NCBI GenBank assembly: GCA_965285935.1
Contig: OZ260665.1
Coordinates: 27,714,001-27,778,000 of the forward strand
Reading direction: 5' to 3'
Length of the DNA: 64,000 bases
From: Ophelia neglecta
Lineage: Eukaryota
The translations under genes and the position numbers were made by a program. The notes under the pieces are model-generated. The model was not told where the DNA came from and searched no databases. It worked only from the letters and a program-made list of their open reading frames with translations. Shown in pieces: positions 186 through 64,000 of this stretch (its first letter is position 1; the number at the start of each line of letters is the position of its first letter).

Positions 186-3100
186 CTACACCAATAATAC
201 ACCACAGAACTATTAATAATTACAACTTACAGGAGTGTATTAACAATACCAATACACTGAAAACAAATCGTTTGAAGAGTTACATTGACAAGGAACTGGC
301 TAATATTTTTTTTTGGCAATTTTTTTTTTCTGAAGGTAAAGAGAGCTTCAAAGTTCAAACAGAATGGGTGAAAAATATAGTTTATTGTAGCTAGTGTCAA
401 TAAATCTGTTCAGTGGTGGCTTTATATCTGTTAACATTAATATTATACATGTGCAAGATCAATTTTGACCATCATGGAACATACCTCATATTACCCTGCT
501 TACACAGATTTCTTTACAATATATTATAACTGACAAATGATACCAAAGCACACTATTTCAGCTAGAAGGTGTAGACTGGTCAGATTATCAATGTTACCCA
601 CCAGATACTCTATACCAGTACTTACAATAAGAGTAAAGTTGCCAGACGTCTTGCTCGCCTCCCCACTCCCCGAATTGGCTGGGAATCCCTGAATGTCATA
701 GATTGTCACTGCAAACGTCTTGGCCACCTAGGATCACAGAAATCACACATTAGACACATTAAGGAACCTTTATGACAAAACAAACTACAATCTTTGATGA
801 ATAAATTATTTTATTATAATGAGAAAGGGTTTTATAAAAACATCATAAACATAAATACATGTCAACTAGTTTGAATGTACATGTAGAATAAAATGTAATG
901 TATGCAGGCAGAATTTACTGGTAAAAAAACATGTCACAGTAGAAATATTGAATGTGAAATAAAAGTTCAGGCTGTTTAACAGGTTAAAAGCTACTTAGCA
1001 CAATATCGGGTTGATGTACTGGTAAAAAGGTCTAAATAAAATTGGTAAACAACTAAAAGCCAGTGTGCCAAGCAGGAGAACACTGGAAAAATTCTCCCAT
1101 GCAGTGGCTTTTGTGCAAGAACAAGAGGTTTTTCTACAAATAGTACATCCCCCCATCCTCTGTCCCTCTCAGCCCGTTTCCATCAAGACCAGTGGTCCTG
1201 TCCTCTCTCAGCCTGCCCCTACCTCCCTCCCTACCTACCCAGTGTACTAGAGATACCTACCTCCCATCCTGTGTGGGGTTTGACTGTCAGAGAGAAGGAC
1301 TGCTGTCCCCCTGAGATACCTACCTCCTACCCTGGGAGGGGTTTGACTGTCAGAGAGAAGGACTGCTGTCCCCCTGAGATACCTACCTCCTACCCTGGGA
1401 GGGGTTTGACTGTCAGAGAGAAGGACTGCTGTCCCCCTGAGATACCTACCTCCCATCCTGTGTGGGGTTTGACTGTCAGACAGAAGGACTGCTGTCCCCC
1501 TGAGATACCTACCTCCCATTCTGTGTGGGGTTTGACTGTCAGAGAGAAGGATTGCTGCCCCCCTGAGATACCTACCTCCCATCCTGTGTGGGGTTTGACT
1601 GTCAGACAGAAGGACTGCTGTCCCCCTGAGATACCTACCTCCCATCCTGTGTGGGGTTTGACTGTCAGAGAGGACTGCTGTCCCCCTGAGATACCTACCT
1701 CCCATCCTGTGTGGGGTTTGACTGTCAGAGAGAAGGACTGCTGTCCCCCTGAGATACCTACCTCCCATCCTGTGTGGGGTTTGACTGTCAGAGAGAAGGA
1801 CTGCTGTCCCCCTGAGATACCAACCTCCCACCATGTGTGGGGTTTGACTGTCAGAGAGAAGGACTGCTGTCCCCCTGAGATACCTACCTCCCATCCTGTG
1901 TGGGGTTTGACTGTCAGAGAGAAGGACTGCTGTCCCCCTGAGATACCTACCTCCCATTCTGTGTGGGGTTTGACTGTCAGAGAGAAGGACTGCTGTCCCC
2001 TGAGATACCTACCTCCCATCCTGTGTGGGGTTTGACTGTCAGAGAGAAGGACTGCTGTCCCCCTGAGATACCTACCTCCCATCCTGTGTGGGGTTTGACT
2101 GTCAGAGAGAAGGACTGCTGTCCCCCTGAGATACCTACCTCCCATCCTGTGTGGGGTTTGACTGTCAGAGAGAAGGACTGCTGTCCCCCTGAGATACCTA
2201 CCTCCCATCCTGTGTGGGGTTTGACTGTCAGAGAGAAGGACTGCTGTCCCCCTGAGATACCTACCTCCCATCCTGTGTGGGGTTTGACTGTCAGACAGAA
2301 GGACTGCTGTCCCCCTGAGATACCTACCTCCCATCCTGTGTGGGGTTTGACTGTCAGAGAGAAGGGCTGCTGTCCCCCTGAGATACCAACCTCCCATCCT
2401 GTGTGGGGTTTGACTGTCAGAGAGAAGGGCTGCTGTCCCTCTGAGACACCTACCTCCCATCCTGTGTGGGGTTTGACTGTCAGAGAGAAGGACTGCTGTC
2501 CCCCTGAGATACCTACCTCCCATTCTGTGTGGGTTTGACTGTCAGAGAGAAGGACTGCTGTCCCCCTGAGATACCTACCTCCCATCCTGTGTGGGGTTTG
2601 ACTGTCAGAGAGAAGGGCTGCTGTCCCCCTGAGATACCAACCTCCCACCATGTGTGGGGTTTGACTGTCAGAGAGAAGGACTGCTGTCCCCCTGAGATAC
2701 CTACCTCCTACCCTGGGAGGGGTTTGACTGTCAGAGAGAAGGACTGCTGTCCCCCTGAGATACCTACCTCCCATCCTGTGTGGGGTTTGACTGTCAGAGA
2801 GAAGGGCTGCTGTCCCCATGAGATACCTACCTCCCATCCTGTGTGGGGTTTGACTGTCAGAGAGAAGGACTGCTGTCCCCCTGAGATACCTACCTCCCAT
2901 CCTGTGTGGGGTTTGACTGTCAGAGAGAAGGGCTGCTGTCCCCCTGAGATACCAACCTCCCATCCTGTGTGGGGTTTGACTGTCAGAGAGAACGATTGCT
3001 GCCCCCTGAGATACCTACCTCCCATCCTGTGTGGGGTTTGACTGTCAGAGAGAAGGGCTGCTGTCCCTCTGAGATACCTACCTCCCATCCTGTGTGGGGT

Positions 3101-6100
3101 TTGACTGTCAGACAGAAGGACTGCTGTCCCCCTGAGACACCTACCTCCCATCCTGTGTGGGGTTTGACTGTCAGAGAGAAGGACTGCTGTCCCCCTGAGA
3201 TACCTACCTCCCATCCTGTGTGGGGTTTGACTGTCAGAGAGAAGGACTGCTGTCCCCCTGAGATACCTACCTCCCATCCTGTGTGGGGTTTGACTGTCAG
3301 ACAGAAGGACTGCTGTCCCCCTGAGATACATACCTCCCATCCTGTGTGGGGTTTGACTGTCAGAGAGAAGGGCTGCTGTCCCCCTGAGATACCTACCTCC
3401 CATCCTGTGTGGGGTTTGGCTGTCAGAGAGAAGGACTGCTGTCCCCCTGAGATACCTACCTCCCATCCTGTGTGGGGTTTGACTGTCAGAGAGAAGGACT
3501 GCTGTCCCCCTGAGATACCTACCTCCCATCCTGTGTGGGGTTTGACTGTCAGACAGAAGGACTGCTGTCCCCCTGAGATACATACCTCCCATCCTGTGTG
3601 GGGTTTGACTGTCAGAGAGAAGGGCTGCTGTCCCCCTGAGATACCTACCTCCCATCCTGGGAGGGGTTTGACTGTCAGAGAGAAGGACTGCTGTCCCCCT
3701 GAGATACCTACCTCCCATCCTGTGTGGGGTTTGACTGTCAGAGAGAAGGGCTGCTGTCCCCCTGAGATACCTACCTCCCATCCTGTGTGGGGTTTGACTG
3801 TCAGAGAGAAGGGCTGCTGTCCCCCTGAGATACCTACCTCCCATCCTGGGAGGGGTTTGACTGTCAGAGAGAAGGACTGCTGTCCCCCTGAGATACCTAC
3901 CTCCCATCCTGTGTGGGGTTTGACTGTCAGAGAGAAGGACTGCTGTCCCCCTGAGATACCTACCTCCCATCCTGTGTGGGGTTTGACTGTCAGAGAGAAG
4001 GGCTGCTGTCCCCCTGAGATACCTACCTCCCATCCTGTGTGGGGTTTGACTGTCAGAGAGAACGATTGCTGCCCGCCTGTATTGGCTGCCCAGACCAGGA
4101 ACCCCTCGGTTTCTTCCCTTCCTTCAGCATTGTAGAAGCTCACATCGTTGGTCTCCTCTAACTTGCGGTTGGGGTTGTTGGGGCCCATTATACGCCAGCG
4201 CAGCTATGGAGGTGGTGGAAAACAGAATGAGTCAAATGTAATAGAGGCCACTGTCAAATTCCAATGGTAGATATTGGCCTCAGCAATATGGATGAAAATC
4301 AGGCTCAACTGTAATTTCTCTAATTATTCATACACTTTTTTAATTCATACACTTCAGTTTACCATTATTTTAATTTCATTTAAACCTCTAATTATTAGTA
4401 CACTTATAAGATACCCCATTATGGCAACTATAAAAACTAGCAGTCAAAATAGTAATAATTTTGTTTTGCCTCTAATTATCATATTCCTTGAATTTAATAT
4501 AATTTTCGGTGTCTGAAATATTACAGGAATTACAGTATATGCGCTATTCATGGAAGGATTCCATATATCTTGCAAAGTGATATACAGACACCTAGTTCAT
4601 GTATAGATCAAGCATATTTTTTTAACCCTCTTATGAAATTTGACCAAATAAGTTATTTTCTTTTTGAACATTCTTAATTGGCAGCAGATTTTATCTATAT
4701 TGTTATATATAATTTATCTATATTATTATCATGTGTATCATCTTTCTATAATACAGTGAAACCTTTGAATTAAGACCACCAAAGGGACAGAAAAATGCTT
4801 GTCAGATTTTATAGTTGGTCTGTTTGGACAGGTTATTTAACATTGAAAGTATTAATCAAAGGCCTTATATTGGTGGCCTGAACTGACAGGTGGTCTGATT
4901 ATAGAAGTGGTCTTTAAGGCAGGTTTCACTGTACTTCAAACTTGAGTATTTGAGGGACATCCATGCCCACCTAGCCTGTTAATATAGTGTATTAGTTTTG
5001 CCCTACCGTTTGACTGCCGAGCAGGCCTCCACTCCTCTCTATGGTCAGTGTTATCGTGGTGGTGGTGTCAGGGTTAGGGATGGTGACCAGAGTCTGACCC
5101 ACAAATGAGAACTTGCCGTTGGGGTAATCAGACTTGGCGATGGTCACCACGGAGGTCAGCTCCTTACCAAGGACGGCACCACCTGTAACACACACAGAGA
5201 ACTGGATTGGATGTTTGGGAATTTAATCAACTGCACAACTCACTTGCTGGTAATTTACTTTCCAGCAAACAGAAACAAGATATTATTTTGCTGGTGTGTG
5301 ACACCATTTAACATGTGTTTCTAATAATCATACTTTAATTGAGCCAGGCAAGAACATTGTCTGATTCCAGTTACAAAATATAGTAGGATACAAGTACATG
5401 TATATACCTGACTAGCTGGGAGTGATAACCAACCTAAAATACCAACATTCTAACTTAAAACTTGATGGGGGCTTTAACAGATGGCATAATGGAAGGTTTA
5501 ATTCAGTTTCCATAATTGAAGTTGCAATTTCTGGAAGTATTTGAAGTTCTACAATAATAAAACTACACAATTGACAGCAGGAAAACAGATTTTCACCATA
5601 CAGTAGAGTGAAGTCTGTGAATTAAGACCACCAAAGGGACTGGAAAATTCTGGTCAGATTTTGGAGGTGGTCTGTTTAGACAGGTTATTTAACGTTAAAG
5701 GCTATAGAATGGTTTTTATGTTATTGTCCTCAATTGACAGGTGGTCTGATTATAGAGGTGGTCTTTCACTGTATATGTCAAAGACTGACCCACAGGAATA
5801 ATTTGGAACATACAAAAGTATTATGCTAAGATGAACAGGGCGGTCTCACCTCTTGTGTCAGTTAATTTCACCATGAACTGTTCTGTAAATTCCATTTCCA
5901 TGTCGTCTATGATGGTGACATTGATGGTGGACCTTGCCACTCCGTCGGGGATGATGATCTCGCCGGCATACAGGATGTAGTCCACGTTGGAAGTGGCAGA
6001 TATGTCCTCAGCTCGGTATCGGACAGCCACATCACCAAACATCCCCGGTCCTCTGATCACTGGGATGGCTGCCACTCCCACGTCCTCGTACGCTAGGACC

Positions 6101-9100
6101 AGCAATTAAACAACACAAGTGTCATAGAATAATATAAGACTCCCATTTAATAGGTAAAGATCATGACATTAAATATTTGGGGGCAGACAGGATAATGGAG
6201 GAGACAGAATGGGTTATCTGAGTGATTAATTACCAATGAAGTTGAGTGCCTCCTCGGGAAATTCCACAAAGCCCTCAGCGTTGTCGTTTTTATCTATAAC
6301 GATGGTCTTGGCCGCCTGAGGGCCGACTGCTGGGGCCTGGTCCAGTCTTAGACCAGATATCAAGGTGTAGTTGTTTGACCTGGAATAGAATCAGATAAAA
6401 GGTGGTAACTACATATAGTAGAAATACCATATACAATACCCAGACTCTGCAGAGCATTATGGTAGATAGAAACATCATTCTGTATTCTTTAGAATAAATT
6501 ATCATTTAAACATTGCCAAAAAGACAAAATATGGCTCTCCTGATAATCCAAATATTAATCTAGAACCATATATCTCATATACACAACTAAATTCATAGAG
6601 ATTACCACGTGAAGAGTAAGTTGTTTCTATTGAGGGCTTATACAGCAGCTCACTAGGGGGCTTTTGATTTAACATGTCTAACCACTTACACAGGGACCAG
6701 CAGTTCACTAGGGGGCTTTTGATTTACAGTGTCTAACCACTTACACAGGGTACAGCAGTTCACTAGGGGGCTTTTGATTTAACATGTCTAACCACTTACA
6801 CAGGGTACAGCAGTTCACTAGGGGGCTTTTGATTTAACATGTCTAACCACTTACACAGGGTACAGCAGTTCACTAGGGGGCTTTTGATTTAACATGTCTA
6901 ACCACTTAAACAGGGTACAGCAGTTCATTAGGGGCTTTTGATTTACGGTGTTTAACCACTTACACAGGGTACAGCAGTGCACTAGGGGGCTTTTGATTTA
7001 ACATGTCTAACCACTTACACAGGGTACAGCAGTTCTCTAGGGGGCTTTTGATTTACGGTGTTTAACCACTTGCACAGGGTACAGCATTTCATTAGGGGCT
7101 TATGATTTAACATGTCTAACCACTTACACAGGGTACAGCAGTTCACTAGGGGGCTTTTGATTTAACATGTCTAACCACTTACACAGGGTACAGCAGTTCA
7201 TTAGGGGCTTTTGATTTACGGTGTCTAACCACTTACACAGGGTACAGCAGTTCACTAGGGGGCTTTTGATTTACGGTGTTTAACCACTTGCACAGGGTAC
7301 AGCAGTTCATTAGGGGCTTATGATTTAACATGTCTAACCACTTACACAGGGTTCAGCAGTTCACTTGAGGGCTTTTGATTTATCATGTCTTACCACTTAC
7401 ACAGGGTACAGCAGTACACTAGGGGAGGCTTTTGATTTAACATGTCTAACCACTTACACAGGGTACAGCAGTTCACTTGAGGGCTTTTGATTTACGGTGT
7501 CTAACCACTTACACAGGGTACAGCAGTTCACTTGGGGGCTTTTGACTTAACATGTCTAACAACTTACACAGGGTACAGCAGTTCACTAGGGGGCTGTGAT
7601 GTAACATGTCTAACAACTTACACAGGGTACAGCAGTTCCACTGCTGTGATGTTGACAAAGAACCTCTCAGGGCCTTCAGCAATAACGTCATCCACTATGT
7701 TAATAACCACTGTCTGGCGCGCTTGGCCGCTGGAAAACGTCATTGCTCCAGACGATGCCCTGAAGTCAGGCGGGTCAGAGAACGAGGTGGCAGTCCCGGA
7801 GGAGGTAGTGTATAGAACACGGACCTGTCCGTCTAGGCCGTAATTCCGGACTACTGGTACTGTCACCTGAAAATAACAATTAAACAGATGTCAACTTCAC
7901 TCTAATAAATGTCTGGGAAGAAACTGGGCAGAAAAACATTAATTACTTAATAGGATTAATAATGATTAATTATATACCAAACTAAGGAGAGGTCCACTTA
8001 CTGATGTATGATCTTCCTGTACTACTATCTCTGATGGCTGAGTGAATTCAAACAGGCCATGTGGGTAGTCACTGGCCACAATGGTAATGTCTACCGTCCG
8101 CGCAGACATGTCGATGGTGGCTCCTCCATTGGCAGAAGTCAGCTCTAGTGTATACTTCTGGCGCAGCTCAGGAATGCTGTCGTCTCCTGCCTGCAGGGAC
8201 AGAGATATAGTAGTACATAGTAAGTATAAGTAGTAAGTAGTATAGTAATCTAATAAACACACCTTTTCTGGAGTGTAAATGGTAAAGTCTTGAATAAATA
8301 TTGAAGTGTGCTATTATATTTCAATATAGTTTTCTGGATTGAAAGTTTTCAGTTAAAGAGTTAAATTGCTCATAACCCATCTGTCGTACAGGACTAGTGT
8401 ACTGACCGGTATAACAATGTAAGCCTCACCTTCATTACCCAGCAGTAGTGTACTGACCTGTATGACAATGTAAGCCTCCCCTTCATTACCCAGCAGTAGT
8501 GTACTGACCTGTATGACAATGTAAGCCTCCCCTTCATTACCCAGCAGTAGTGTACTGACCTGTATGACAATGTAAGCCTCCCCTTCATTACCCAGCAGTA
8601 GTGTACTGACCTGTATAACAATGTAAGCCTCCCCTTCATTACCCAGCAGTAGTGTACTGACCTGTATGACAATGTAAGCCTCCCCTTCATTACCCAGCAG
8701 TAGTGTACTGACCTGTATGACAATGTAAGCCTCCCCTTCATTACCCAGCAGTAGTGTACTGACCTGTATGACAATGTAAGCCTCCCCTTCATTACCCAGC
8801 AGTAGTGTACTGACCTGTATGACAATGTAAGCCTCCCCTTCATTACCCAGCAGTAGTGTACTGACCTGTATGACAATGTAAGCCTCCCCTTCATTAACCA
8901 GCAGTAGTGTACTGACCTGTATGACAATGTAAGCCTCTCCCTGCATGTCCTCAAACACCACCTCCCCAGAGGTCTGGAGGAAGGCTGTCAGGTCTCTCTT
9001 CAGGATCTGCCAAGTCACCTTCACCTCTCCATACACCCCAGGCGCTCGCGCCAACTGGATCTCAGCCCTACACAGATAAGTATAACATCAGCATGGGGAA

Positions 9101-12100
9101 TATAAACATACAGTACAGGAAATTATGTCTGCCATACAACAGGGGCTTACTAGCACAATCTGGATCTCAGATCTGACAAATCTTAATTATAGACACTTTG
9201 CTTACCTGTGTCACTACTAATGGAATCGTATCCAGGAGGTAAAAGGTTTAAAGAAAACTAACTCTTATATATGGAAATTATCAAAAACTAACTGCACATG
9301 AACTGATCCCTTAATGTCTTGATTAAGACTCGAGACTGGTACCTTTAGCTCCCCGAGAGATCAAACTTACATTCCGTCGTATCCGGCAGTGGGCTCCCCC
9401 ATAACCAGTCTACGATAGCCGGGGGTGATGGACACGGTGCCACCGGCCCCTGGGTCAGGCAGGATTACCACGGTGGCATCCCCCTCTGTGGGGCTGATTA
9501 TAGCGTTGTTGTCAACGGCGACCAGGGAGACCGTGAATGTCTCCTGGCCCTCCAGCTGGTTGTCTGGCTTGGTTACTAAGGTGATCTGTTTACGGGACTC
9601 TCCCTACAAACAGGTCAGAAAGAGAAAAATATTTACGAATCTCAGCAAAAGATATTTTTATACCAAGCATTGTTTGGATTAAATGTTCTTTTCAACAATG
9701 TGAATTATTATACTAGTGTACTGAAGTCTTACTACTCATGGACCAAAACCGGATTGTGCCCATTGGGGGTTCATTGAAGTCATACTACTTACAGGCCCAA
9801 ACCTGACCGCCCATGAAGGGTTCATTGTATCCATACTACTTACAGACCCAAACCTGACTGTGCCCATGAGGGGTTCATTAAATCTATACTACTAACAGGC
9901 CCAAACATGACTGTGCCCATGAGGGGTTCATTGAATCCATACTACTTACAGGCCCAAACCTGACTGTGCCCATGAGGGGCTCATTGAAGTCATACTACTT
10001 ATAGGCCCAAACCTGACTGTGCCCATGAGGGGCTCATTGAGGTCATACTACTTACAGGCCCAAACCTGACTGTGCCCATGAGGGGCTCATTGAAGTCATA
10101 CTACTTACAGCCCAAACCTGACTGTGCCCATGAGGGGTTCATTGAATCCATACTACTTACAGGCCCAAACCTGACTGCTCATGAGGGGTTCATTGAATCT
10201 ATACTACTAACAGGCCCAAACCTTACTGTGCCCATGAGGGGCTCATTGAAGTCATACTACTTACAGGCCCAAACCTGACTGTGCCCATGAGGGGCTCATT
10301 GAAGTCATACTACTTACAGGCCCAAACCTGACTGTGCCCATGAGGGGTTCATTGAATCCATACTACTTACAGGCCCAAACCTGACTGCTCATGAGGGGTT
10401 CATTGAATCTATACTACTAACAGGCCCAAACCTGACTGTGCCCATGAGGGGCTCATTGAATCCATACTACTTACAGGCCCAAACCGGACTGTGCCCATGA
10501 GGGGTTCATTGAAGTCATACACTGCGTCTGCACCGAGTCTCCAGTCGACATTGACCACTCCGTCTGTCCCTCGACGTACTATGGTCAAGGTCACTCGCCC
10601 GCTGGGGTCAAACTCTATCTGGGACTCCCTAACTGTCACCTGGCAATGGATAGACTTGTAAATTGAATGATTACATGATCTGGTACTATCAAACAGTAGA
10701 CTGTATTGTGCATTTATAAATGAAATTCACTCTACAATTGGAGTATAGAATACAATTGACTTCAATCATTTCCTTAACAAGGAAGATCTATTCAGCACTT
10801 TACCTTTCTTAATCCCTGAGGTTGCATTAGAAATAGAAAAATCAAGAAATTCTTATTAGTCTTACTATATTCATTCACAAAAACATAATCTCCATTTCAA
10901 GTTTGGCTTGGTTTTGAGAATAATTAATGTTGCTTCTTAACTAATGCTTTCATCTGCTTTTATCCACATGTAAATGACAAATTTTTCACTTTTTATATTC
11001 TTTGAACCTTAATGTGTTTACATTTGAAGGAGCTACCTGAATTGTCTCAAAGGAGAACACTCCGTTGGGGGAGTCGTTACGTAGGATTCCTACACGGACA
11101 GTTTGGTCAGAACCAATCGAGGCTCCTCCAGAGGTCACTCGGATCAACTGGACATCAAATGTCTGCAAAACACATAACATGTCAGAATACAGTAAACTTG
11201 TCATTATACCATGTCTAGGGCTTAATTACTTTCCTCAATTCCATTTGTTGACATTCTGATAATTACTGTTGTGAAGCTTGGTAATTATCATTATCTTGTT
11301 TGAAGGACACCTACATGTATATTGATCTATATGTACAATACCCAAGCCTCCAGGCTGCAAGGCTCACAAAGGAGCACAGGAGTAAGGTAAAAAGAATTGG
11401 AGTTCTTTAAAGTAGAGATACCTCACAGGGACTGTCAGACAATTCTGATGTTGATGACACCACATCATTGTGAACCAGGTGGCCTTACTGTCTTCAGCCT
11501 GGAATTTGGCTCAGCTATACTATAGTAACTCCTTTGTGAAGCCATTTTATCTCCTCTTTAATGAACCTCCCATCCTTTTTTTACCTTAAAGTGCCCCTGT
11601 ATGGCTACGAGTAGCATTTCTAGCCCGGTGGGAGACAATCAGCAGAGATCAGGTCTCAGATGATGTGATGAGCCTACTATACCTGGAGGTCCTCAGGCAG
11701 AGTGTCGTCCACTATAGTGATGACAATGAAGGCTTCCTGCTGACCCTCCTTGAACCTGACTATACCTCCGGAGGGGGTGAAGTCGTCCGTGTCCGCCTCG
11801 CGGGGACTGGCCTGCCAGGAGACCTCCACCTCCCCAAACAGGCCCACCGTACGGCTCAGCTTCAGTCTCACCTGCCCTATACCCTCGTACACGTCTACAC
11901 GGTTCTCTATGTTCTGGAATAACAAGGGGAGCACAAGCATCTCACTACAGAGATTGTCCAGAAACTCGCACATAACATCAAGCCTCTAGCAGCAAAGCTC
12001 TTACAGTAACATGTTGCATATATGGAATATTTAAAAAGGAGCCTGAATTGGAGATCATATGTCAACCTGAATAGTGTCTAGTTTAAAACTGGGTGTGTTT

Positions 12101-15100
12101 CTGGCTGCATCAGACTGGTGTCCAGGCTGGGGAACTGAGATTAAAATGGTAAAATTTGCAACAGTTGCTGGCCCCACTACGATATGATTATGGCTATGCG
12201 TGATATTGCATGAACTCTGGTGCGCTTTGCTGATTTAATAAAATGCTAGACGCATGTTTTTATTATATGAATCAAGTTATGCAAGTGTGTATGCCTATCA
12301 TTGTTTCTGATACAGATATTCTAGATGTCTATAACTCTTGTGTTGTATATAATTTGTATAGCTAAGCACAATCCAAGGCTGTGCCTTAAACATATTAAAC
12401 AAGTACACGGATACCCATCATAAATATACAGTAAAAAACCTGTGAATTGAGACCAGCCAAGGGACTGTAAAATGTTGGTCTTATTATAGAGGTGGTCTCT
12501 TTAGACAGGTTGTTTTACATTGAAAGTGCACAGTAGGGTCTTCATATTAGTGGTCTGAATATAAAGATGGTCTGAATATACAGGTGTTCTTTAAGGTAGG
12601 TTTCACTGTATATGTTATCTATCAATAATCTGAGCCTGTTTCCTTTACTCCTGTCAGGCCTATGCATACCTTAGTGATACTGAACTGGACAACTCCCCTG
12701 GCATTATCATTCTCAGTTATGGTCACCACGGCTATGTCTCCAGGACGACGCACACTTGGTGCTGACCCCTGCTGGATGCCGGACACACCGATCAACTGAA
12801 CGGAGGTGATATTCACCCAAAATATCTCTGTCACTTCTGGGGCAGAGTCCTTCAAACGCAAGTGGGAAAAATAAATGAAGAACCGTTATCAACCTGTACA
12901 TAAACTCTTTGACTGAATGATTTTTTAAAAACCTCTATTCAATAAATACAACAAACATGGTATACCACCTCTAATTTTTAAGTTTTAATTCAAAAAGGTT
13001 AAGCTATCTGCTAAATCAGGACTAAACCATTTCTCATCAGTAGTACAGATGCCATTGTTGTTTTGGCTTTGATTTCTTCCAGCCTCAGGGTTATAACAGC
13101 ATGTTGTGTTTACCGTTAGTATGGTGATTTCTACGGGGATCCTGGTGACATTCTCCCTCATGTCCACCGTGGCCTGCTGAGCCACGTAGTCCTCTCCAGA
13201 GACCGCCTGCTCCTTGGTGGCTACAGTCACCGCTCGTAGGGTCCTGCTCAAGGTAACCAACTAATACATGTACTGCCGGTAGTTACAAACACAGTGCTTT
13301 TGAAAAGTGCACACTATTGCATGGAATGTGTAAGATCATTGAAAAGGGCAAGAATGTTTGGTCAAATGATATATATGTGAGTGCTAGCCATTATCATCAC
13401 TGTCACTGGCTCTGACAGTTTGACATCTGCATCAAGGAAAAGCTTGTTAAGCTAGGGCAGAAATTACAATACTTAACATGATATATGTCTGTCCAATTGT
13501 TAAGTCATTAAGGACTCAATGCCAAAAAGTTTGCCTCAGTAGCTGGCAGTTGTATGCCTGACAAGACCTTACTTGTATAAGACACTATAAGGCTTGATGT
13601 GTACCATCTTTTACAAACTAAAGGTCACTTCTCATACTATGATGACATCGTTGTTCTTTTGCAATAAATGAGGTTAAATTGAAATGTCAATGCTTAGCAA
13701 ATATGTAACATTTCATAGCGTCAAATGTTTGGAAATAAAGTCTGGCCAGACACTCCTAACAAAAAAACTGAGTAGATGGTACTGAGATGTTGATGACTGG
13801 GATGCCTGCTTACATGTATGTGACCCTAATGTGACCCAGAGACCCCTGCCTCCTGGTCAGGTGTAACAAGACGGTGGAGTCTCCCCCCTCAGGCTCGGCT
13901 ACCAGGTAGGTGGCCTTCTCCCACAGCACCACTCCATAGGGGGAGTCATTGGCCAGCACTGTCAGTCTGCATACATTGTTAGCACCTGGAAGCATGAAAA
14001 GACATAAATTATAAATAGATTATTTTATTACTTAATACTCATCTATCCACTCATATTAAATTACACATCTATCTACCCTGTCTGATCCCCCCCCCCCCCC
14101 CCCCACCACACACACACACTTAGCCAATGCAGCAAGGCTGACTGGCTGTATAACATGCCACACATCCGCCACCCCCCCACCCCCCCCACCCCCCGTCTGA
14201 ATGCACTCGTACCCCCTTATCCATTGTTACACGAAAAAACTAACCATCTGCCCCACCCCCTTCCTCTCAACTTTTGTCTGTCTTGCATCCTCCCCCTGAA
14301 CCAATGTTGAAGGACAAATATCCCAAACCCCCCCACCTCACAACCACCCTCATATGACTGTACACTGGTCCCTATGATGTAGGGACACCTCTACATCCAA
14401 ACAAAAGTGTCCCAACATAGCAGGTGTCCCTTCATCAGAGGGACATTAATATAGGAAAGATAGGACATGAGCATTGAAAAAAGGTCCTGTGGTTGGAGGG
14501 AGTCCCTTCATCAGAGGGTCCCTTCATCGCAGGGACCACTGTGCCTTACCTATTTTGGCGCCCCTGTTGGGGAGTGAGGTGCCTTTCTCTACGACCTCGG
14601 TCAGTGTTAGGTAGGAGAGCTCATCCATCTCCGACAGGTTGTCATCTCTGATAGTGATTGTGATGGTCGCTGCTGCCTGGTCATTGGCAAACTCAACCTA
14701 GGGACAAAATGCAGTAACAAAAGTCATTAACATTGTGGAAGACTGGTCATAACTCGTCCTACAGTAAAGGCCAATCCTAAGACACTTCCTGCACCAATTA
14801 ATGGCTAAATCTGGAATCTTCAACATTTCCAGTGGAGAACATTTCGTGCATTACACTATAGTATATTGCTTTACTGCAACATTTAAGTGTCTTCTTATGT
14901 TATTTAAGTAGAAAATGCCTGTTAACCCGCAATCCGAGGCAGGCCCCTAGGTCTCACAAAGCACTGGCATTCTTATAATACTAAGTTTATGGACATCAAA
15001 GATCTCAGTCTCTCATGGGTATGAAGGCAATGACGTAACATATGTCAATTTAAATCTTTTTTTACAACTGTACTCTCTGTACAGTTTTCAAACAAAGAAT

Positions 15101-18100
15101 TGGTGAAAACAAGGGTGGCATTTAAGTGATTGGGACAAATTACACCTGGGACATAGAGTAGTTTTAAAACTAAACTGAGTTGTGGCTTAGCCTAAATCAA
15201 ATAGCTACTGGTACCATATAATGTAAGTAGTTATATGAAAAAAATGTCCAGTGCTAGAGCATACCTTTCCCTCCACAGGGAATATGTCCAGAGCCCCCTG
15301 GTGGGCTCCCGAGGCAGTCCACCTCACCACCACCCTACCACTGGAGCCCCTCCGACGGACCACGTTGATCTGAACCAGGTTATCTGCTCCAGGAGTCTCC
15401 TCCTCTCTACGCTCCAATGAATCCTGAAATACAATGGTATATACAACCATCTGACCTCCCGAGATATGTAGGCCTTAGTCCTCTGTTAAACACCTCTGGA
15501 CTACCTTCATCAAATTCAAAATGTCACCATTTTAGTTACTTGTAACTTTAGATGTCCAAGTTAAGGTATATATCACTATTAAATTGTGACTATGAACTCG
15601 TTATTTAATAGTTTTCCTTATAAAACCCCAAACCAATTTTCTCAGTCGCTTCCTTTCCCTAAATCATGCGAATATGACAGGATCCTTTTCAGACAATATC
15701 TAAACAACATACATCGGCAAATTCTACAATGCCGTGTCCATCATCATTTGACAGGATGTGGACTGAGACTTCATGACGTGGCCCTAGCTCCGCCCCTTGT
15801 CTGGGATTGGTCAGTTCTACAAAGAACGTCTCCGTGTCCTCGGCATTGAGATCATCCAGGATTGTCACAGAAGTGGTCAGCTCTGTCTGACCCGGAACAA
15901 AGGTCAAGGTCACCGATCTGTGTAGAGTAGAACAAAAATTAAACCAAGAAGAGAATAAATTTAGAATATTTGAATAGATAATTCCTTGCTTCATATACAT
16001 TTAAGTCTCTGGGGCACATGCCTATACACCTATATAATTCACAGTTTTTTTTACTAAAACATATTAGATTTGTAGCATGATAGTCAATTTTCATGATTAT
16101 AATATTGGGCTACCTTGGAATGTAGTCGCTGTCTCCTAGCAAATTGACCTCTCGGACGCTAAACTGTAGCACTCCAGACGAGTTGTATAAGGGTGCAGTC
16201 ACCATGGCAACGTGGTGACCAGCTGACTGTTCCACTTCCAGGGGATGCATGTCCATAGCCTGCGACCCCTGCCAGGTCATGTTGAACTGACCCATGGACT
16301 CATCCCAGGCGTACACAGCACTGGGGGAGCTTTTGGAGGCTATCACCAGGTAGGCTGACCAATAGGAAACAGTAACTCTTATATGGACCAATAGGAAACA
16401 GTACCTCATATATGGACCAATAGGAAACAGTAACTCATATATGGACCAATAGGAAACAGTAACTCATATATGGACTGGCAATTCAATTATAATAAGGAGC
16501 TTCAGCATTAACTTATATGTTATAATAGATGCACTATTGGAAACATTTATGACAAACTGCCTAAAATCTGTTCTTGTTATAAGCATTGATAGGCTGATAT
16601 CAAATATTCCTTTACCTACTGAAGCCTAATGTACAGGTAATGCATGTTGCTATTATAGGTGTTCTCCAAAGGATGTGAGACAGGTTTGGAGGATTTTGTT
16701 TGTTTTTCTTTTAGATTAGGTTATTTTTGGCCTTTCTTTGTAACTTACCCACACTGTTGTCCACGCTGAAGACACCTACATGTTCTATGACATACCCACA
16801 CCGTTGTCCATGTTGAAGACCATCATGTTCTATGACTTACCCACACCGTTGTCCACGTTGTCAACCCCCCATGTTCTATGACTTACCCACACCGTTGTCC
16901 ACGTTGTCAACCCCCCATGTTCTATGACTTACCCACACCGTTGTCAACGTTGTAGACCCCCCATGTTCTATGACTTACCCACACCGTTGTCAACGTTGTA
17001 GACCCCCATGTTCTATGACTTACCCATGCCGTTGTCCATGTTGAAGACTCCCACATGCTCTATACCATTGCCCCTGATCTTCTGGATGGAGGTCCACAAC
17101 TGGGTTAGACTGTTCCAGCTGTATATCTAGCATATCAATACAAACAAAAGAAATACTTTAAGACTAGAGCTTTGAAATGTGAATAAATGTATCTCTGGTA
17201 TGGGTATGTTTATATGTGGTTAACAGTACAAAACAGTTTCAAAACATGTCAATTTCCATTTTATTTTCATTAAGTTGGCCAGATGAAGTTTATTTTTATT
17301 AGCTGAGAGTAGATAAGTCGGGAGACTTACATTAAGATCCTGTTGGGTGTTTCCGATGTTGTCCTGACCGTTGGCTATCACCAGATACGAGTCAGTACGG
17401 GTCTTAAAGAACGTGAGATCCACTGCGCCGTGGGTGTCCACTTGCTGGTGAATGGTTAAATGGTCATCAGAGTCCAACTTGTAGATTATAGACCTGGAAA
17501 TGTATCAAGAAGTGTATAGGAAAAAAACTGGATACCCTACCAATGATATCCCACAGAAGATGAGATCTTGATTCTGAGGTATATTTACATAATTTATATT
17601 TAACTGGTCTCATTCTCAATTCCAAGCCATGTTAATGGGAGATGAAAAACTTGCAATGGTTTTTTTGACCAAGTAGTGGGATATGTTGTAGTGCATTTTT
17701 TACCTCTGACTTTAAGACTATCAATAGTGTCAAAAGGTATCTTCAAAGTACCTGTCCACAACAAAATTTCCAGTGATATCATTCTGACAGTTTGACCTTA
17801 AAACCAGAACTCACTTTCTTACCTCAATACCAGTACTTACTTGAGCTCATATGCGATGCTTTCTGACCTCAATACCAGTACTTACTTGAGTTCATATGCC
17901 CTGCTCTCTGAGTCAAAATGGTTGGCAATGGCAACAAAGATGATGCCATCCACTTCCAGGCTGTCCACTGCAATGGCTCCCTTGGTTGCTAGGAACTGGA
18001 TTGGTAGAGAGCCAAACTTGTTGTTTGTGGCCTCCCATTGGTAGACGTATGACATGACCCCAGTTTGACCTTGGTTGTTCTGGTAGTTAGCAATCACCAG

Positions 18101-36100: not shown

Positions 36101-39100
36101 GGACACGCTGTAGTCCAGACCGTAGGTGGCACTCCCTGAGCCAACCTCAAACTTCACTGTCACCTGCCACAAATATGTTAACTTCACTTCTGTCATTATA
36201 TACCCATGATCTTTAACAACAATGTACCAACAAACTTCTATATTAGCTTTCACAAATTAAGTTGTAAGTAGTGCTCTGCTTTTAAATAGTTGTTTTGTTT
36301 TTATTTCAAATTGAAGGCTTTTATCAATTAAATAGTCATGTTTGGGATTTCCTTGGAGTATTAGCTTTCAGAAAAATATATAGAGACATTCGAAGTCATG
36401 GTTATCAAGAAGTGTTTGCCAGTTTTCACCATGAGAAGCCTTTAAAGTCTTACTAATAAAAGAAACATTTTGACAAAGTAATGTTCAGAAGCTCAAGCTG
36501 GGCTACAAACAATGGATTTTTACAGATTGGTTTTATTCCCTGCACAGTATTGAGATGACTATATAAGATGAGTGTTTACCATTGCCAGGTTGACAGTTAT
36601 AACTTACAGATCCAAAGGCTCCTCCTGACCTGACCACACTGGTCAGCACCCCAGTGAACTCCTCACTGACGGTTATAGCGTCGTTGGACAGCTGTAGAAC
36701 GCCGCTGGGGTTGTCATTGGCTGATATAATGATCTGACTGTAACACTCTGTGACAGGACCCAGGCGAGGTGAATCCTGAACTGTTAACATACAGGCTTAG
36801 AGCGTAGTGATATGCCCCAGACTGGACTTATTTCAATGTATTACAAATTTATGACCTTTTTGATGACATCACTTACACACCCTATAAGCTATTAAACATG
36901 ACTTTGTAAAACGAAGTTAGCCCATCACATTGCTCAATTTGTGCAGATCAAATAGCATTACATAATACTGTTTGTGCAGTCTATTACTACCATTTTATAG
37001 GCCTGACTAAGGAATTGGAAAAGAAATTTAATTCACTTCTCATTGGAATTCTATGAATCATACCAGACTTTGGTTTCTATCAGATAAGAACCAAGAAACT
37101 AGACAGCATTTAGGCAATCATAGAAAAAATTGGCTAAACTTAGAGCAAATTTTACAACAGCATTCTGCACAGCCCTTTTAAGATGACAACCTGAAAATCC
37201 AAATTGAGCCTTTTGAAGACCAACTTTTAGTTTTCTGTTAATAACCGAACCAGCCTAAAGCTACGGACTAATCAGAAATACACAAACCAATTCTGGACTG
37301 TTCCCCCTGTATGAGATAGGCGCCCGTCAGCCGTACAAAGAAAGTCTCGTCCACCTCAGGCTCCAAGTCGTCTCTGACGGTGACATTGAAGGCGGCGGTG
37401 GTGTTCCCAGGGCCTATGACCACAGACCCTGTGGAGTTGGAGTAGTCCAGGGGGCCAGCCCTCGTCCCTCCCGGCAGGTAGGGGTAGCTCTCCCAGGGGC
37501 GCAGTGTGGAGTAGTCTACTCGCACTGTGCCAAAGGTCCCCGAGTTAGCCACTCTCTCAATGGTCACTGCTACTTCTGATAGAATAAAGATATGCTGGTA
37601 ATCATCCAGTTATGTTACATTCCTAATCAAAGTATACATTGCCTCCACTAAACGGTCAATATTTAAATAATGAAGTAGGCAAAATCAGTAGAAAGGAATT
37701 GTATGCTTTTGTGTGGTGGTTTTTCATTATTTAATCAAAGAAGGAAAAATTCCCAGGTACAAACATGGAAGCACAGACTTTAAAATCCGGAAGTGCATAT
37801 CCCTCTATTAGTTTACCTTGGAATGTCTCTTCCACATAGATGGGCCTGTTGTCGGCTGCTATAACAAACACCCCGTAGGGATCGTCATTCCCTATGACGG
37901 TTATGCTGGCCTGCAGCTTGCCTTCTTCTCCCAAAGAGCCCTTCACAGAGAATAAGTTTGTTCATTGAAACATCATTATTAAGAGTTAAAGCAGAGTGTT
38001 AGATTTTCGCTGATATTTGAACCATTCTAAACTCTTTATTTCCCAATTTCAAATAACTTGTTTTAATTGTTTCAAGTTTGCTAAAATTGAAGATTTTTAA
38101 AAGTGCTCTATGACAAACAATATTGAAAAGTGAGTGTTGCAAACTGCTTTAAATTTAAGGATACTTTTTTATTTAGCAAAAGAAAAAATCTCCAAGGCAA
38201 ATCCACAAGATAAAGTTGTTTTCAAAGAACCTTGCATTGCAGTAGGCATGCCATATAGATGCAAACATGATGGTTTTATTGACATGTACCTGTGAGACTT
38301 GTAGTATGTACAGAAATCAATCATTACCAGTGAGACTTGTAGCATGTATACGAATCAAGCCCTACCAGTGAGACTAGTAGTATATACATGAATCAAGCCC
38401 TACCAGAGACTTGTAGTATGTTTATGAATCAAGCCCTACCAGTGAGTCTAGTAGTATATACATGAATAAAGCCATACCAGTGAGACAAGTAGTATATACA
38501 TGAATAAAGCCACACCAGTGAGACAAGTAGTATATACATGAATCACGCCCTACCAGTGAGACTTGTAGCAGTTGGACATGGTATATCTCATCCAGCTCAG
38601 GCATGAGGTCGTCTCGGATGCGCAGGACAAACTCCGAACTCTGCTGACCTGTGTCAAAGGTCAGATAACCAAAAGATTCCATGATGTCATCGTCTGTGTC
38701 ATCAGTGACCTGCCAGGTCACATTCACCTGGCCGATAGCTCCACCTTCTCTCACAACCTACAGTGTCGACATGAGACATGTGCCAGTTAACTTAGAAAGT
38801 GCTCAATGACCAAACAGCTTAGGACCATGCAATTATATTCATTTGATGATATCCAGATTGAAGATGACAACAGAGTTCAATGTACTAACATTTTAATTTA
38901 ATTTTTGCTACCAAACTGCTAGCCTATATATACAATATCAACATGTCACTTAATTTTATGGACTCTGCTACGAGTAGCTGTATTTTTACAGTTTTACAGT
39001 TAGACCTGACCAATAAATTTAGACTGAGACCCATGTTTAAGTGAAGGGCCTAATACATTGTATCAACGATTTGATAACTAATTTTGTCAAGCTGGCTGGT

Positions 39101-53811: not shown

Positions 53812-54770
53812 TAGCCTACATCCCTGCCCTGTCCCCTGAGCTAGACCCCTCACTCACAATCTCCCCCTGTATCATCCTCACTCTGCCTCATGGTACACAC
53901 CACTCAGCACCCCTCCCACAGCCTACAGCCTACATCCCTGCCCTGTCCCCTGAGCTAGACCCCTCACTTACAATCTCCCCCTGTATCATCCTCACTCTGC
54001 CTCATGGTACACACGACTCAGCACCCCTCCCACAGCCTACATCCCTGCCCTGTCCCCTGAGCTAGACCCCTTACTCACAATCTCCCCCTGTATCATCCTC
54101 ACTCTGCCTCATGGTACTCACAACTCAGCACCCCTCCCACAGCCTACATCCCTGCCCTGTCCCCTGAGCTAGACCCCTTACTCACAATCTCCCCCTGTAT
54201 CATCCCCACTCTGCCTCATGGTACACACCACTCAGCACCCCTCCCACAGCCTACATCCCTGCCCTCTCCCCTGAGCTAGACCCCTCACTCACAATCTCCC
54301 CATGTATCATCCCCACTCTGCCTCATGGTACACACCACTCAGCACCCCTCCCACAGCCTACATCCCTGCCCTCTCCCCTGAGCTAGACCCCTCACTCACA
54401 ATCTCCCCCTGTATCATCCTCACTCTGCCTCATGGTACACACCACTCAGCACCCCTCCCACAGCCTACATCCCTGCCCTGTCCCCTGAGCTAGACCCCTT
54501 ACTCACAATCTCCCCCTGTATCATCCTCACTCTGCCTCATGGTACACACCACTCAGCACCCCTCCCACAGCCTACATCCCTGCCCTGTCCCCTGAGCTAG
54601 ACCCCCTCACTCACAATCTCCCCATGTATCATCCTCACTCTGCCTCATGGTACACCCGACTCAGCACCCCTCCCACAGCCTACATCCCTGACCTGTCCCC
54701 TGAGCTAGACCCCTCACTTACAATCTCCCCCTGTATCATCCTCACTCTGCCTCATGGTACACACGACTCA
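53812..54770. repeat. 107-bp minisatellite (~9 copies)
   Basis: CAGCCTACATCCCTGCCCTGTCCCCTGAGCTAGACCCC...CCCCTCCCA, C-rich on plus strand. Confidence 0.95.
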
Positions 54771-63747: not shown

Positions 63748-64000
63748 CTCTCTGTGCTGTAAACGAGGACCACGGCTATAGATCTGTATTGTGCCGCTCT
63801 CTCTGCTGTAAACGAGGACCACGGCTATAGATCTGTATTGTGTGTCTCTCTCTGCTGTAAACGAGGACCACGGCTATAGATCTGTATTGTGTCTCTCTCT
63901 CTGCTGTAAACGAGGACCACGGCTATAGATCTGTATTGTGTGTCTCTCTCTGCTGTAAACGAGGACCACGGCTATAGATCTGTATTGGGCCACTCTCTCT
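63748..64000. repeat. 49-bp minisatellite (>=5 copies, runs off window)
   Basis: GCTGTAAACGAGGACCACGGCTATAGATCTGTATTG...CTCTCT at exact 49-nt spacing. Confidence 0.93.

What the first reader, a model, noticed from the sequence alone, without database searches (positions are those of the whole stretch)
1250..17911. Array monomers differ from their parent exon mostly at synonymous sites
Seen: the exon 48 codons GGC GGG CAG CAA TCG read GGG GGA CAG CAG TCC in the consensus monomer, i.e. 4 differences, all silent (GGQQS kept). Exon 42 GGA reads GGG/GGT and GTC reads GTT in copies. Exon 40 GAA reads GAG and CGG reads AGG (silent first-position Arg change). Exon 28 has GAG>GAA and GAA>GAG. The distal exon 30 copy has GAG>GAA, GTG>GTA and GGA>GGT. 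Replacements also occur (TCC>CCC, GAC>GGA, AGG>ATC, ATG>GTG). Neutral intronic DNA should not respect codon position, especially in the out-of-frame 53- and 46-bp arrays. Inference: the arrays preserve older or alternative alleles of the exon, or they exchange sequence with the coding copy by gene conversion or unequal crossover and are thereby indirectly purged of replacements. Either way they would act as a reservoir of spare exon ends.
Basis: partly seen in the sequence, partly recalled or inferred. Interest (0 to 1): 0.85.

Follow-up and report, generated by a model that had tools for sequence, protein, structure and literature searches.

The report
Splice-donor arrays: silent bias explained
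Introns of a giant adhesion-receptor gene begin with tandem copies of their own exon end plus splice donor; the copies look "silently" different from the exon only because the exon is constrained, while the copies themselves drift neutrally.

Summary
The gene lies on the minus strand and is ADGRV1/VLGR1-like (Calx-beta and EPTP repeats). Six introns in the range start with minisatellites whose unit is the last 17-52 nt of the exon, the GT donor and the first intron bases. These resemble the 'mirage' repeats described in amphioxus.

The silent bias holds only for differences that nearly all monomers share. I analysed 23 such arrays in 264 kb (174 distinct substitutions).
- Variants carried by at least 80% of monomers are 18/29 synonymous (26% expected, P=0.0001). 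This replicates in 17 arrays outside the finding (10/17).
- Variants carried by under 50% of monomers are 26/106 synonymous, as expected under neutrality.
- Counted once each, the variants in the seven arrays of the window (six in the range plus the 38-bp array) fall 19/20/26 over codon positions (P=0.16).

A model with only the exon constrained and the arrays neutral fits the numbers. It predicts a within-array divergence of 0.058, against 0.053 observed. The arrays carry stop codons and frameshifts, and their periods show no preference for multiples of 3.

'Older alleles' is plausible and some exon-array exchange is likely. Indirect purging and a 'reservoir of spare exon ends' are not supported. 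Polarity could not be settled without a close outgroup.

The parts
4027..4203 (-). Parent exon of array A63 (59 codons, phase 0-0). The last 52 nt (4027-4078) are the exon-derived part of the 63-bp unit. The real donor GT is at 4026-4025.
   Evidence: The open frame and the AG/GT borders are read. Orthologue fragments continue ...GWE directly into the sequence of the next exon. So the first donor is the one that gives the conserved protein.
1261..4026 (-). Array A63: 44 monomers of 63 bp (11 nt of intron start plus 52 nt of exon end). All of them keep GT. Three monomers have a 1-nt deletion and one a 3-nt deletion, and TAG/TGA variants occur.
   Evidence: TRF, (63 bp x 45, 95% matches). Monomer list, alignment. 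Stops and frame.
626..727 (-). The next exon (34 codons, VAKTFAVTIYDIQ...). This is the acceptor for the intron that holds A63.
   Evidence: Sequence. Homology to orthologue fragments P0002 and P0005.
6635..7621 (-). Array B55: 18 monomers of about 55 bp. Only the last 17 nt align cleanly to the exon end (7622-7638), because indels break the frame further 5'.
7622..7866 (-). Parent exon of B55. It encodes a Calx-beta domain and ends in phase 2.
   Evidence: Pfam PF03160, E=5.9e-16.
8407..8916 (-). Array C51: 10 monomers of 51 bp (27 nt of intron plus 24 nt of exon end).
8917..9067 (-). Parent exon of C51, ending in phase 0.
9740..10474 (-). Array D53: 14 monomers of 53 bp (11 nt of intron plus 42 nt of exon end) with a 210-bp higher-order pattern. 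The most distal monomer (9740-9792) keeps the exon states CGG, GAA and GAC.
10475..10639 (-). Parent exon of D53 (55 codons).
16749..17023 (-). Array E46: 6 monomers of 45-47 bp. The parent exon ends at 17024 in phase 1 and encodes an EPTP repeat.
17841..17885 (-). F45: a single extra 45-bp copy. The parent exon ends at 17886 in phase 2 and encodes an EPTP repeat.
   Evidence: Pfam PF03736, E=7e-11.
38291..38553 (-). Array G38: 7 monomers of 38 bp of the same kind, lying outside the finding's range. The parent exon ends at 38554.

Best explanation
The arrays are junction-spanning ('mirage'-type) minisatellites. A segment made of the exon's 3' end, the 5' splice site and the first intron bases was duplicated in tandem and amplified by slippage or unequal exchange. 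Only the first, exon-attached donor makes the conserved mRNA. Everything downstream of it is intron and evolves neutrally.

The silent look of the exon-versus-monomer differences is a by-product of purifying selection on the single coding copy.
- A difference shared by (nearly) all monomers arose either on the exon lineage or on the stem lineage of the array.
- On the exon lineage only silent changes survive. On the array stem any change survives.
- That mixture is enriched for silent changes.
- Amplification then copies those few differences dozens of times, so a reader sees them everywhere.
- Mutations born inside the array stay at low frequency and show no codon-position preference.

Shown: the anatomy, the dependence of synonymy on frequency, and the neutral spectrum of rare variants. 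Inferred: which lineage changed, use of the first donor (from homology only), and exchange between the exon end and the array.
For: (1) Anatomy. Each unit is exon end, GT, then intron start, and the first copy is continuous with an open Calx-beta or EPTP frame.

(2) Data set. 23 junction arrays in 264 kb, 174 distinct substitutions, 657 exon-derived sites. In arrays with at least 4 monomers, the synonymous fraction rises with the share of monomers carrying the variant:
- under 0.1: 8/42
- 0.1-0.3: 7/37
- 0.3-0.6: 8/19
- 0.6-0.8: 3/7
- 0.8 or more: 12/17 (none of 2000 permutations reached the observed count)
Spearman rho is 0.33, P=2e-4.

(3) Variants in under 50% of monomers are 26/106 synonymous against 24.8 expected. 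Their codon positions are 40/32/34.

(4) Replication in 17 arrays outside the finding. Near-fixed variants are 10/17 synonymous (P=0.005). Rare variants are 16/67.

(5) Quantitative fit of the model with exon-only constraint.
- Among differences carried by at least 50% of monomers in the 19 donor arrays, 24/55 are synonymous, against 2p/(1+p)=0.418 expected (P=0.79).
- Arrays with 3 or fewer monomers give 18/48.
- Near-fixed dS is 0.104 and dN is 0.023. These predict a per-monomer divergence of 0.058. The observed value is 0.053.

(6) The arrays are not kept coding.
- A63 has 15 stops in the exon frame, three 1-nt deletions and one 3-nt deletion.
- Only 7/23 periods are multiples of 3.
- Decoy donors decay: 1 is better than the real donor, 121 are equal and 49 are worse.

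(7) Orthologue fragments join ...GWE straight to the next exon's sequence, so monomers are not part of the protein.
Against: Polarity is untested. No close outgroup or population data could be reached.
- Two hints point to array-side silent changes. D53's CGG>AGG has the exon state in the oldest, distal monomer. T44's TCC>TCT is a CpG>TpG change.
- Near-fixed differences are more silent (18/29, 62%) than the simple equal-rate expectation of 42% (two-sided P=0.04). This needs the extra assumption that array-side mutations rarely reach 80% or more of the copies.
- A63's pattern needs exchange or re-seeding as an add-on. Of 5 silent sites at the unit's 5' edge, 4 differ. Of the other 47 sites, none differs.
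- Frames of a few arrays outside the window rest on ORF length alone.
- The sample covers one 264-kb region, not the genome.
Confidence: 0.65

Rival explanations
1. Indirect purging. The exon end and the array exchange sequence by unequal crossover or gene conversion. Array haplotypes dominated by replacement variants then carry a 'conversion load' and are selected against. As a result only silent variants can rise to high frequency inside arrays.
For: - The synonymous fraction rises with within-array frequency, which this model also predicts.
- A63's differences sit only at the unit's 5' edge, as expected if the rest is exchanged with the exon (P=0.003).
- Monomers at 3018 and 1575 carry exon-type states.
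- D53's and T44's silent near-fixed changes look array-derived.
- Intron haplotype divergence of about 8% suggests a very large population size, in which weak second-order selection could act. This last step is inference.
Against: - It is not needed. The neutral-array model reproduces the synonymous fractions and the within-array divergence with no free selection term.
- Replacement variants do reach high frequency: T44 AGC>AGA at 97%, W33 TAT>TGT at 81%, E46 ATG>GTG at 83% and at 100%, S48 GCA>TCA at 100%.
- A63's S>P variant is in 11/44 monomers, including the one next to the exon.
- There is no deficit of replacements below 50% frequency.
Confidence: 0.13
2. There is no real bias. The pattern is chance combined with selective reading of a few conspicuous codons.
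For: - Counted once each, the variants in the window's seven arrays fall 19/20/26 over codon positions (P=0.16).
- Without A63 the excess among major variants in those arrays is not significant (5/13, P=0.22).
- Given 4 differences, A63's four-of-four silent has P of about 0.05 under the exon-constraint model.
Against: The near-fixed excess replicates in 17 independent arrays (10/17 synonymous, 12/17 at third positions, P=0.005). Overall P is 0.0001.
Confidence: 0.07
3. A clustered or templated event, or an assembly mosaic. A63's four edge differences arose in one multi-nucleotide event, or by conversion from a paralogous exon. Alternatively the exon and the array come from different haplotypes of a very heterozygous individual.
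For: - The four sites lie within 13 nt at the duplication junction.
- Intron haplotypes differ by about 8% (records 5/6 and 11/13).
- Near-fixed dS (0.10) is of the order of that diversity.
Against: - The array-type 20-mer occurs nowhere else in the 762-Mb assembly, so there is no paralogous donor.
- Monomer 1575 is an intermediate haplotype (GGG GGG CAG CAA TCC), which argues for at least 2 steps.
- The same-sample contig over the exon (4033-4349) agrees with the assembly at all four sites.
- It would not explain the replication in other arrays.
Confidence: 0.08
4. The monomers are, or recently were, coding through use of downstream donors. They would then be directly under protein-level selection.
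For: The 63- and 51-bp units are in frame. The exon frame stays open for 406 codons into A63 and right through C51.
Against: - All three frames are open in A63 because the unit lacks stops in any frame.
- Frameshifting deletions and TAG/TGA variants occur.
- Only 7/23 periods are multiples of 3.
- Orthologues have no such insert.
- Rare variants are neutral.
Confidence: 0.03

Closest known systems
'Mirage' minisatellites of amphioxus (Adh3, globins BflGb6/9, TnC, PGBD5; PMC3087553, PMC3902484)
   Same: Both are tandem minisatellites whose unit spans an exon-intron boundary and duplicates the splice signal. Both donor-side and acceptor-side types occur. Unit lengths are tens of bp. Both show concerted evolution inside the array, with the edge copies left out of it.
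   Different: Here they are extremely dense. There are 23 in 264 kb, and at least 7 in one gene within the 64-kb window. The organism could not be named. Its COX1 motifs look lophotrochozoan rather than cephalochordate to me, but that rests on memory and is untested. Normal splicing was shown by RT-PCR in amphioxus and is only inferred from homology here. The codon-position spectrum of mirage copies was not mentioned in the mirage passages of the two papers I searched.
Human F7 intron 7 37-bp VNTR (PMC1557585)
   Same: The first repeat element spans the exon-intron boundary, so the authentic donor is followed by identical pseudo-donors that stay silent. That paper's 5'-to-3' scanning model explains how such arrays can be harmless.
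   Different: F7 is a single locus with a few repeats in a mammal. The arrays here have up to 44 monomers (up to 115 in the flanks) and are common. No splicing assay is available for them.
Concerted evolution with edge effects in tandem arrays, and McDonald-Kreitman-type reasoning
   Same: Shared (fixed) and private (polymorphic) differences carry different selective signatures. Boundary repeats escape homogenisation. A63's 5'-edge differences and D53's diverged distal monomer both fit this.
   Different: Here one member of the 'family', the exon-attached copy, is under protein-level selection and all the others are intronic.

Membership tests
Mirage-type (splice-junction) minisatellite | The tandem repeat unit spans an exon-intron boundary, so the first copy is part of the real exon. 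| tested here: met
   For all six arrays in the range, and 17 more, the unit aligns to the exon end plus the intron start and the first copy continues the open frame.
Mirage-type (splice-junction) minisatellite | The copies carry the duplicated splice signal (GT donor or AG acceptor). | tested here: met
   GT is kept in 44/44 (A63), 14/18 (B55), 10/10 (C51), 12/13 (D53) and 6/6 (E46) decoys. Acceptor-type arrays keep the pyrimidine tract plus CAG.
Mirage-type (splice-junction) minisatellite | The repeats do not disturb normal splicing, and only the authentic site is used. | not testable with these tools
   No RNA run holds the region. Indirect evidence only: orthologue fragments join the exon end directly to the next exon's sequence.
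Mirage-type (splice-junction) minisatellite | Length instability, or allelic differences in copy number. | tested here: inconclusive
   Only short contigs of the same sample were available, and they break at the arrays.
Mirage-type (splice-junction) minisatellite | Host is a cephalochordate, the only group in which mirages have been described. | tested here: inconclusive
   The organism is coded. The best match to a COX1 piece is an unnamed ORF at 96% identity.
ADGRV1/VLGR1-like adhesion GPCR (host gene) | Many Calx-beta repeats with an EPTP/EAR block, followed by GPS and 7TM. | tested here: met
   Calx-beta (E=6e-16 to 1e-6) and EPTP (E=7e-11 and 2e-4) on single exons. A GPS-like CxC motif and an FLIGWG TM motif were read by eye in the downstream exons. 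Exons were searched one by one.
Sequence under protein-level purifying selection (claimed indirectly for the monomers) | A deficit of replacement changes relative to silent changes among mutations that arose in the monomers. | tested here: not met
   Variants in under 50% of monomers are 26/106 synonymous against 24.8 expected, with codon positions 40/32/34.

The most novel reading that the evidence does not exclude
The exon end and its array really do form one exchanging family. In this hyper-diverse species the exchange would be frequent enough for selection on the coding copy to reach into the intronic copies as a 'conversion load'. The arrays would then be weakly and indirectly constrained archives of exon alleles. 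They could be read as a built-in fossil record of silent exon evolution, and might occasionally donate sequence back to the exon.
Probability: 0.12. Interest if true: 0.6.

Novelty: new member of a known kind. Interest (0 to 1): 0.3.

Why it matters
There are three points of value.
- It removes a tempting over-interpretation: a 'reservoir of spare exon ends' kept clean by selection. It gives the correct null for such comparisons. Fixed exon-versus-copy differences are expected to be silent-rich (about 2p/(1+p)) even when the copies are junk. Only copy-born variants can test for constraint on the copies.
- It shows that the arrays can serve as neutral internal controls and rough clocks for their parent exons.
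- It documents that junction-spanning minisatellites are very dense in this genome. About a third of all minisatellites in 264 kb are of this kind. That poses a mutational question (why splice junctions?) and a splicing question (how are dozens of equal donors ignored?). Both are more interesting than the codon pattern itself.

Tried and rejected
- Paralogous or ectopic conversion donor for A63's array-type edge. The 20-mer occurs only inside the array (38 hits, all in C8:27715292-27718014). Rejected.
- Close orthologue, to polarise the changes. A search with exon A among proteins of similar length found nothing. The exhaustive search found only distant fragments, at most 67% identical. The nearest one (L029) has a 99-nt intron, no arrays and saturated silent sites. 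Its GGA CAG CAG matches the array type at the two comparable sites, which is only weak evidence.
- Second haplotype or paralogue in the assembly: none.
- RNA evidence for donor use: no RNA run holds the region. The reads call showed only contigs of the same sample.
I did not try to get round this. An automatic pipeline recovered 14 of the 19 hand-curated donor arrays with the right frame. It made 2-3 frame or strand errors, so the curated set was used.
- Mutation-bias explanation (hypermutable third positions or CpG). Rejected, because rare variants show no third-position excess (7/42 below 10% frequency) and most of the CpG-related changes are transversions.
- The original mirage paper (PMC117041) is not held.
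Full report
WHAT IS THERE

The window is G000:C8:27714001-27778000 of a 762-Mb animal assembly. The gene lies on the minus strand. Single exons hit Calx-beta (E down to 6e-16) and EPTP (7e-11). GPS- and 7TM-like exons follow 16-18 kb downstream. So it is an ADGRV1/VLGR1-like adhesion receptor. Exons were searched one at a time by reference. The joined model was deliberately not built.

TRF finds six arrays in 1250-17911, with periods 63, 55, 51, 53, 46 and 45 bp. Read on the minus strand, every unit is the last 17-52 nt of an exon, the GT donor and the first 7-38 nt of the intron. The first copy is the real exon end.

For A63 the exon ends at 4027, and 44 monomers fill 1261-4026. The next exon is 727-626. 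Orthologue fragments from other animals read ...GWE straight into the sequence of that next exon, and most lack this intron altogether. So the first donor is the functional one, and the monomers are not protein. This step is inferred from homology, because no RNA run holds the region.

THE OBSERVATION

The apparent strength of the bias comes from counting copies.
- Copy-weighted, the differences fall 60/47/225 over codon positions. Four A63 variants account for most of this, each carried by 41-42 monomers.
- Counting each distinct substitution once, the seven arrays of the window (the six in the range plus the 38-bp array at 38291-38553) give 19/20/26 (P=0.16). Synonymous changes are 35% against 25.5% expected (P=0.05).

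A LARGER SAMPLE

I added 100 kb on each side and curated 23 junction arrays.
- 20 are donor-type.
- 2 are acceptor-type, one of them 44 bp x 115.
- 1 is a 30-bp array inside a duplicated pseudo-exon.

Frames were set by the only or the longest open frame and by domain motifs. This gives 174 distinct substitutions over 657 exon-derived sites.

With a permutation null that keeps each base change but moves it to another site with the same base in the same array, the synonymous fraction depends strongly on how many monomers share the variant. For arrays with at least 4 monomers:
- under 0.1 of monomers: 8/42
- 0.1-0.3: 7/37
- 0.3-0.6: 8/19
- 0.6-0.8: 3/7
- 0.8 or more: 12/17 (none of 2000 permutations reached the observed count)

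Over all arrays, variants in under 50% of monomers are 26/106 synonymous (24.8 expected) with codon positions 40/32/34. Variants in 80% or more are 18/29 synonymous, 20/29 at third positions (P=0.0001).

The 17 arrays outside the finding replicate this: 10/17 near-fixed are synonymous (P=0.005), against 16/67 of the rare ones. Spearman rho between frequency and synonymy is 0.33 (P=2e-4).

INTERPRETATION

A difference shared by nearly all monomers has two possible origins.
- The exon lineage, which is a single copy under purifying selection, so only silent changes survive.
- The stem lineage of the array, which is neutral.

If p is the neutral synonymous fraction (0.264 here), equal times give 2p/(1+p)=0.418 synonymous.
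- Observed among differences carried by at least 50% of monomers in the 19 donor arrays: 24/55.
- Observed in arrays with 3 or fewer monomers: 18/48.

The model also links three observables. Near-fixed dS is 0.104 and dN is 0.023. Together these predict a per-monomer divergence within arrays of 0.058. The observed value is 0.053. Nothing beyond constraint on the exon is required.

The arrays themselves behave as junk.
- A63 has TAG and TGA variants, three 1-nt deletions and one 3-nt deletion, and 15 stops in the exon frame.
- Only 7 of 23 periods are multiples of three.
- Decoy donors decay relative to the real one: 1 is better, 121 are equal and 49 are worse.

WHAT REMAINS OPEN

Polarity could not be established.
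- No close relative is in the protein collections.
- The nearest, at 67% amino-acid identity, has a 99-nt intron without arrays. It matches the array type at the two comparable silent sites, which is weak evidence.
- Same-sample contigs show the assembly's exon states at the four A63 sites.
- D53's CGG>AGG seems array-derived, because the distal monomer keeps CGG. T44's TCC>TCT also seems array-derived, being a CpG>TpG change.
- Near-fixed differences are somewhat more silent (62%) than 42% (P=0.04). This is expected if array-side mutations seldom reach 80% or more of the copies.

I keep indirect purging as a rival at about 0.13.

Exchange between the exon end and the array is likely in A63. 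All four fixed differences lie in the first 16 of 63 unit positions (P=0.003). Monomers at 3018 and 1575 carry exon-type states. A paralogous conversion donor is excluded.

COMPARISON AND NOVELTY

The arrays match the 'mirage' minisatellites of amphioxus (PMC3087553, PMC3902484). They also resemble the human F7 IVS7 VNTR, where the upstream-most of several identical donors is chosen by 5'-to-3' scanning (PMC1557585).

The organism could not be named.

The density is striking. About a third of all minisatellites with periods of 25-160 bp in the 264 kb (23 of 67 TRF clusters) are of this kind. In the window itself, 7-8 of 13 arrays start in the last few dozen bases of an exon, where I would expect about 0.5 by chance. 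That last figure is a rough estimate of my own.

VERDICT

The codon pattern is real at consensus level but ordinary in cause. The 'reservoir' idea is unsupported.

Noticed in passing
window 4751-4935, 5615-5766, about 12440-12610: Three copies of a roughly 180-nt interspersed element with enormous depth in the sample's contigs (word depth 1e5 to 8e5, with hundreds of joints and loose ends). It is probably a SINE- or MITE-like family filling this gene's introns.
   Followed up: no
L012:6381 to L013:1470 (window-relative -63619 to -58531, plus strand): A 5-kb acceptor-type junction array of 115 copies of a 44-bp unit (pyrimidine tract, CAG, then the first 20 nt of the following exon). The real exon comes after the last copy. 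Exon-state bases are scattered among monomers and never occur together.
   Followed up: partly
L017:3476-4075 (window-relative -16524 to -15925, minus strand): Upstream of a 7TM exon lies a duplicated acceptor plus exon start. It is followed by 20 in-frame 30-bp repeats derived from the exon's interior. This is a pseudo-exon with its own array inside the intron.
   Followed up: partly
window 16357-16475: A 29-bp x 4 array ends 5 nt before the acceptor AG of the next exon. It carries the pyrimidine tract but no exon sequence.
   Followed up: no
L020:2730-3579 (window-relative 90730-91579, minus strand): In the 39-bp array R39 the real donor is a perfect CAG|GTAAGT. All 15 scored decoys are weaker (CGG|GT or CGA|GT). 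The 'silent' TCA>TCG difference sits at donor position -2, so splice-site selection rather than codon position may matter there.
   Followed up: partly
window 4027/727 junction; L029:5160-5265: Most animal orthologue fragments have no intron at this GWE|V position. The nearest relative has a 99-nt intron there and no tandem arrays in 10 kb. So the 3.3-kb array-filled intron is a lineage-specific expansion.
   Followed up: partly
window 5991-6298 and 6366-6687: Two contig versions from the same sample are present. One is identical to the assembly. The other has 23-26 substitutions plus 7-10 gapped bases in about 300 nt. That puts haplotype divergence in introns at about 8%.
   Followed up: no
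window 53813-54770: A 107-bp x 9 array whose unit holds GTAAGT/GTGAGT after a short ATG-containing segment preceded by a pyrimidine tract and AG. It may be a junction array of a small 5' exon. The frame is unknown, so it was not used.
   Followed up: no
window 63748-64000, continuing to +65123: A 49-bp x 28 array with a TTTACAG-like acceptor motif in each unit. No adjoining open frame was found.
   Followed up: no
window 4087: All three runs of the sample read G on the coding strand where the assembly has A (GCA>GCG, silent). This is either a silent exon polymorphism or an assembly difference. It lies 9 nt upstream of the duplicated segment.
   Followed up: no
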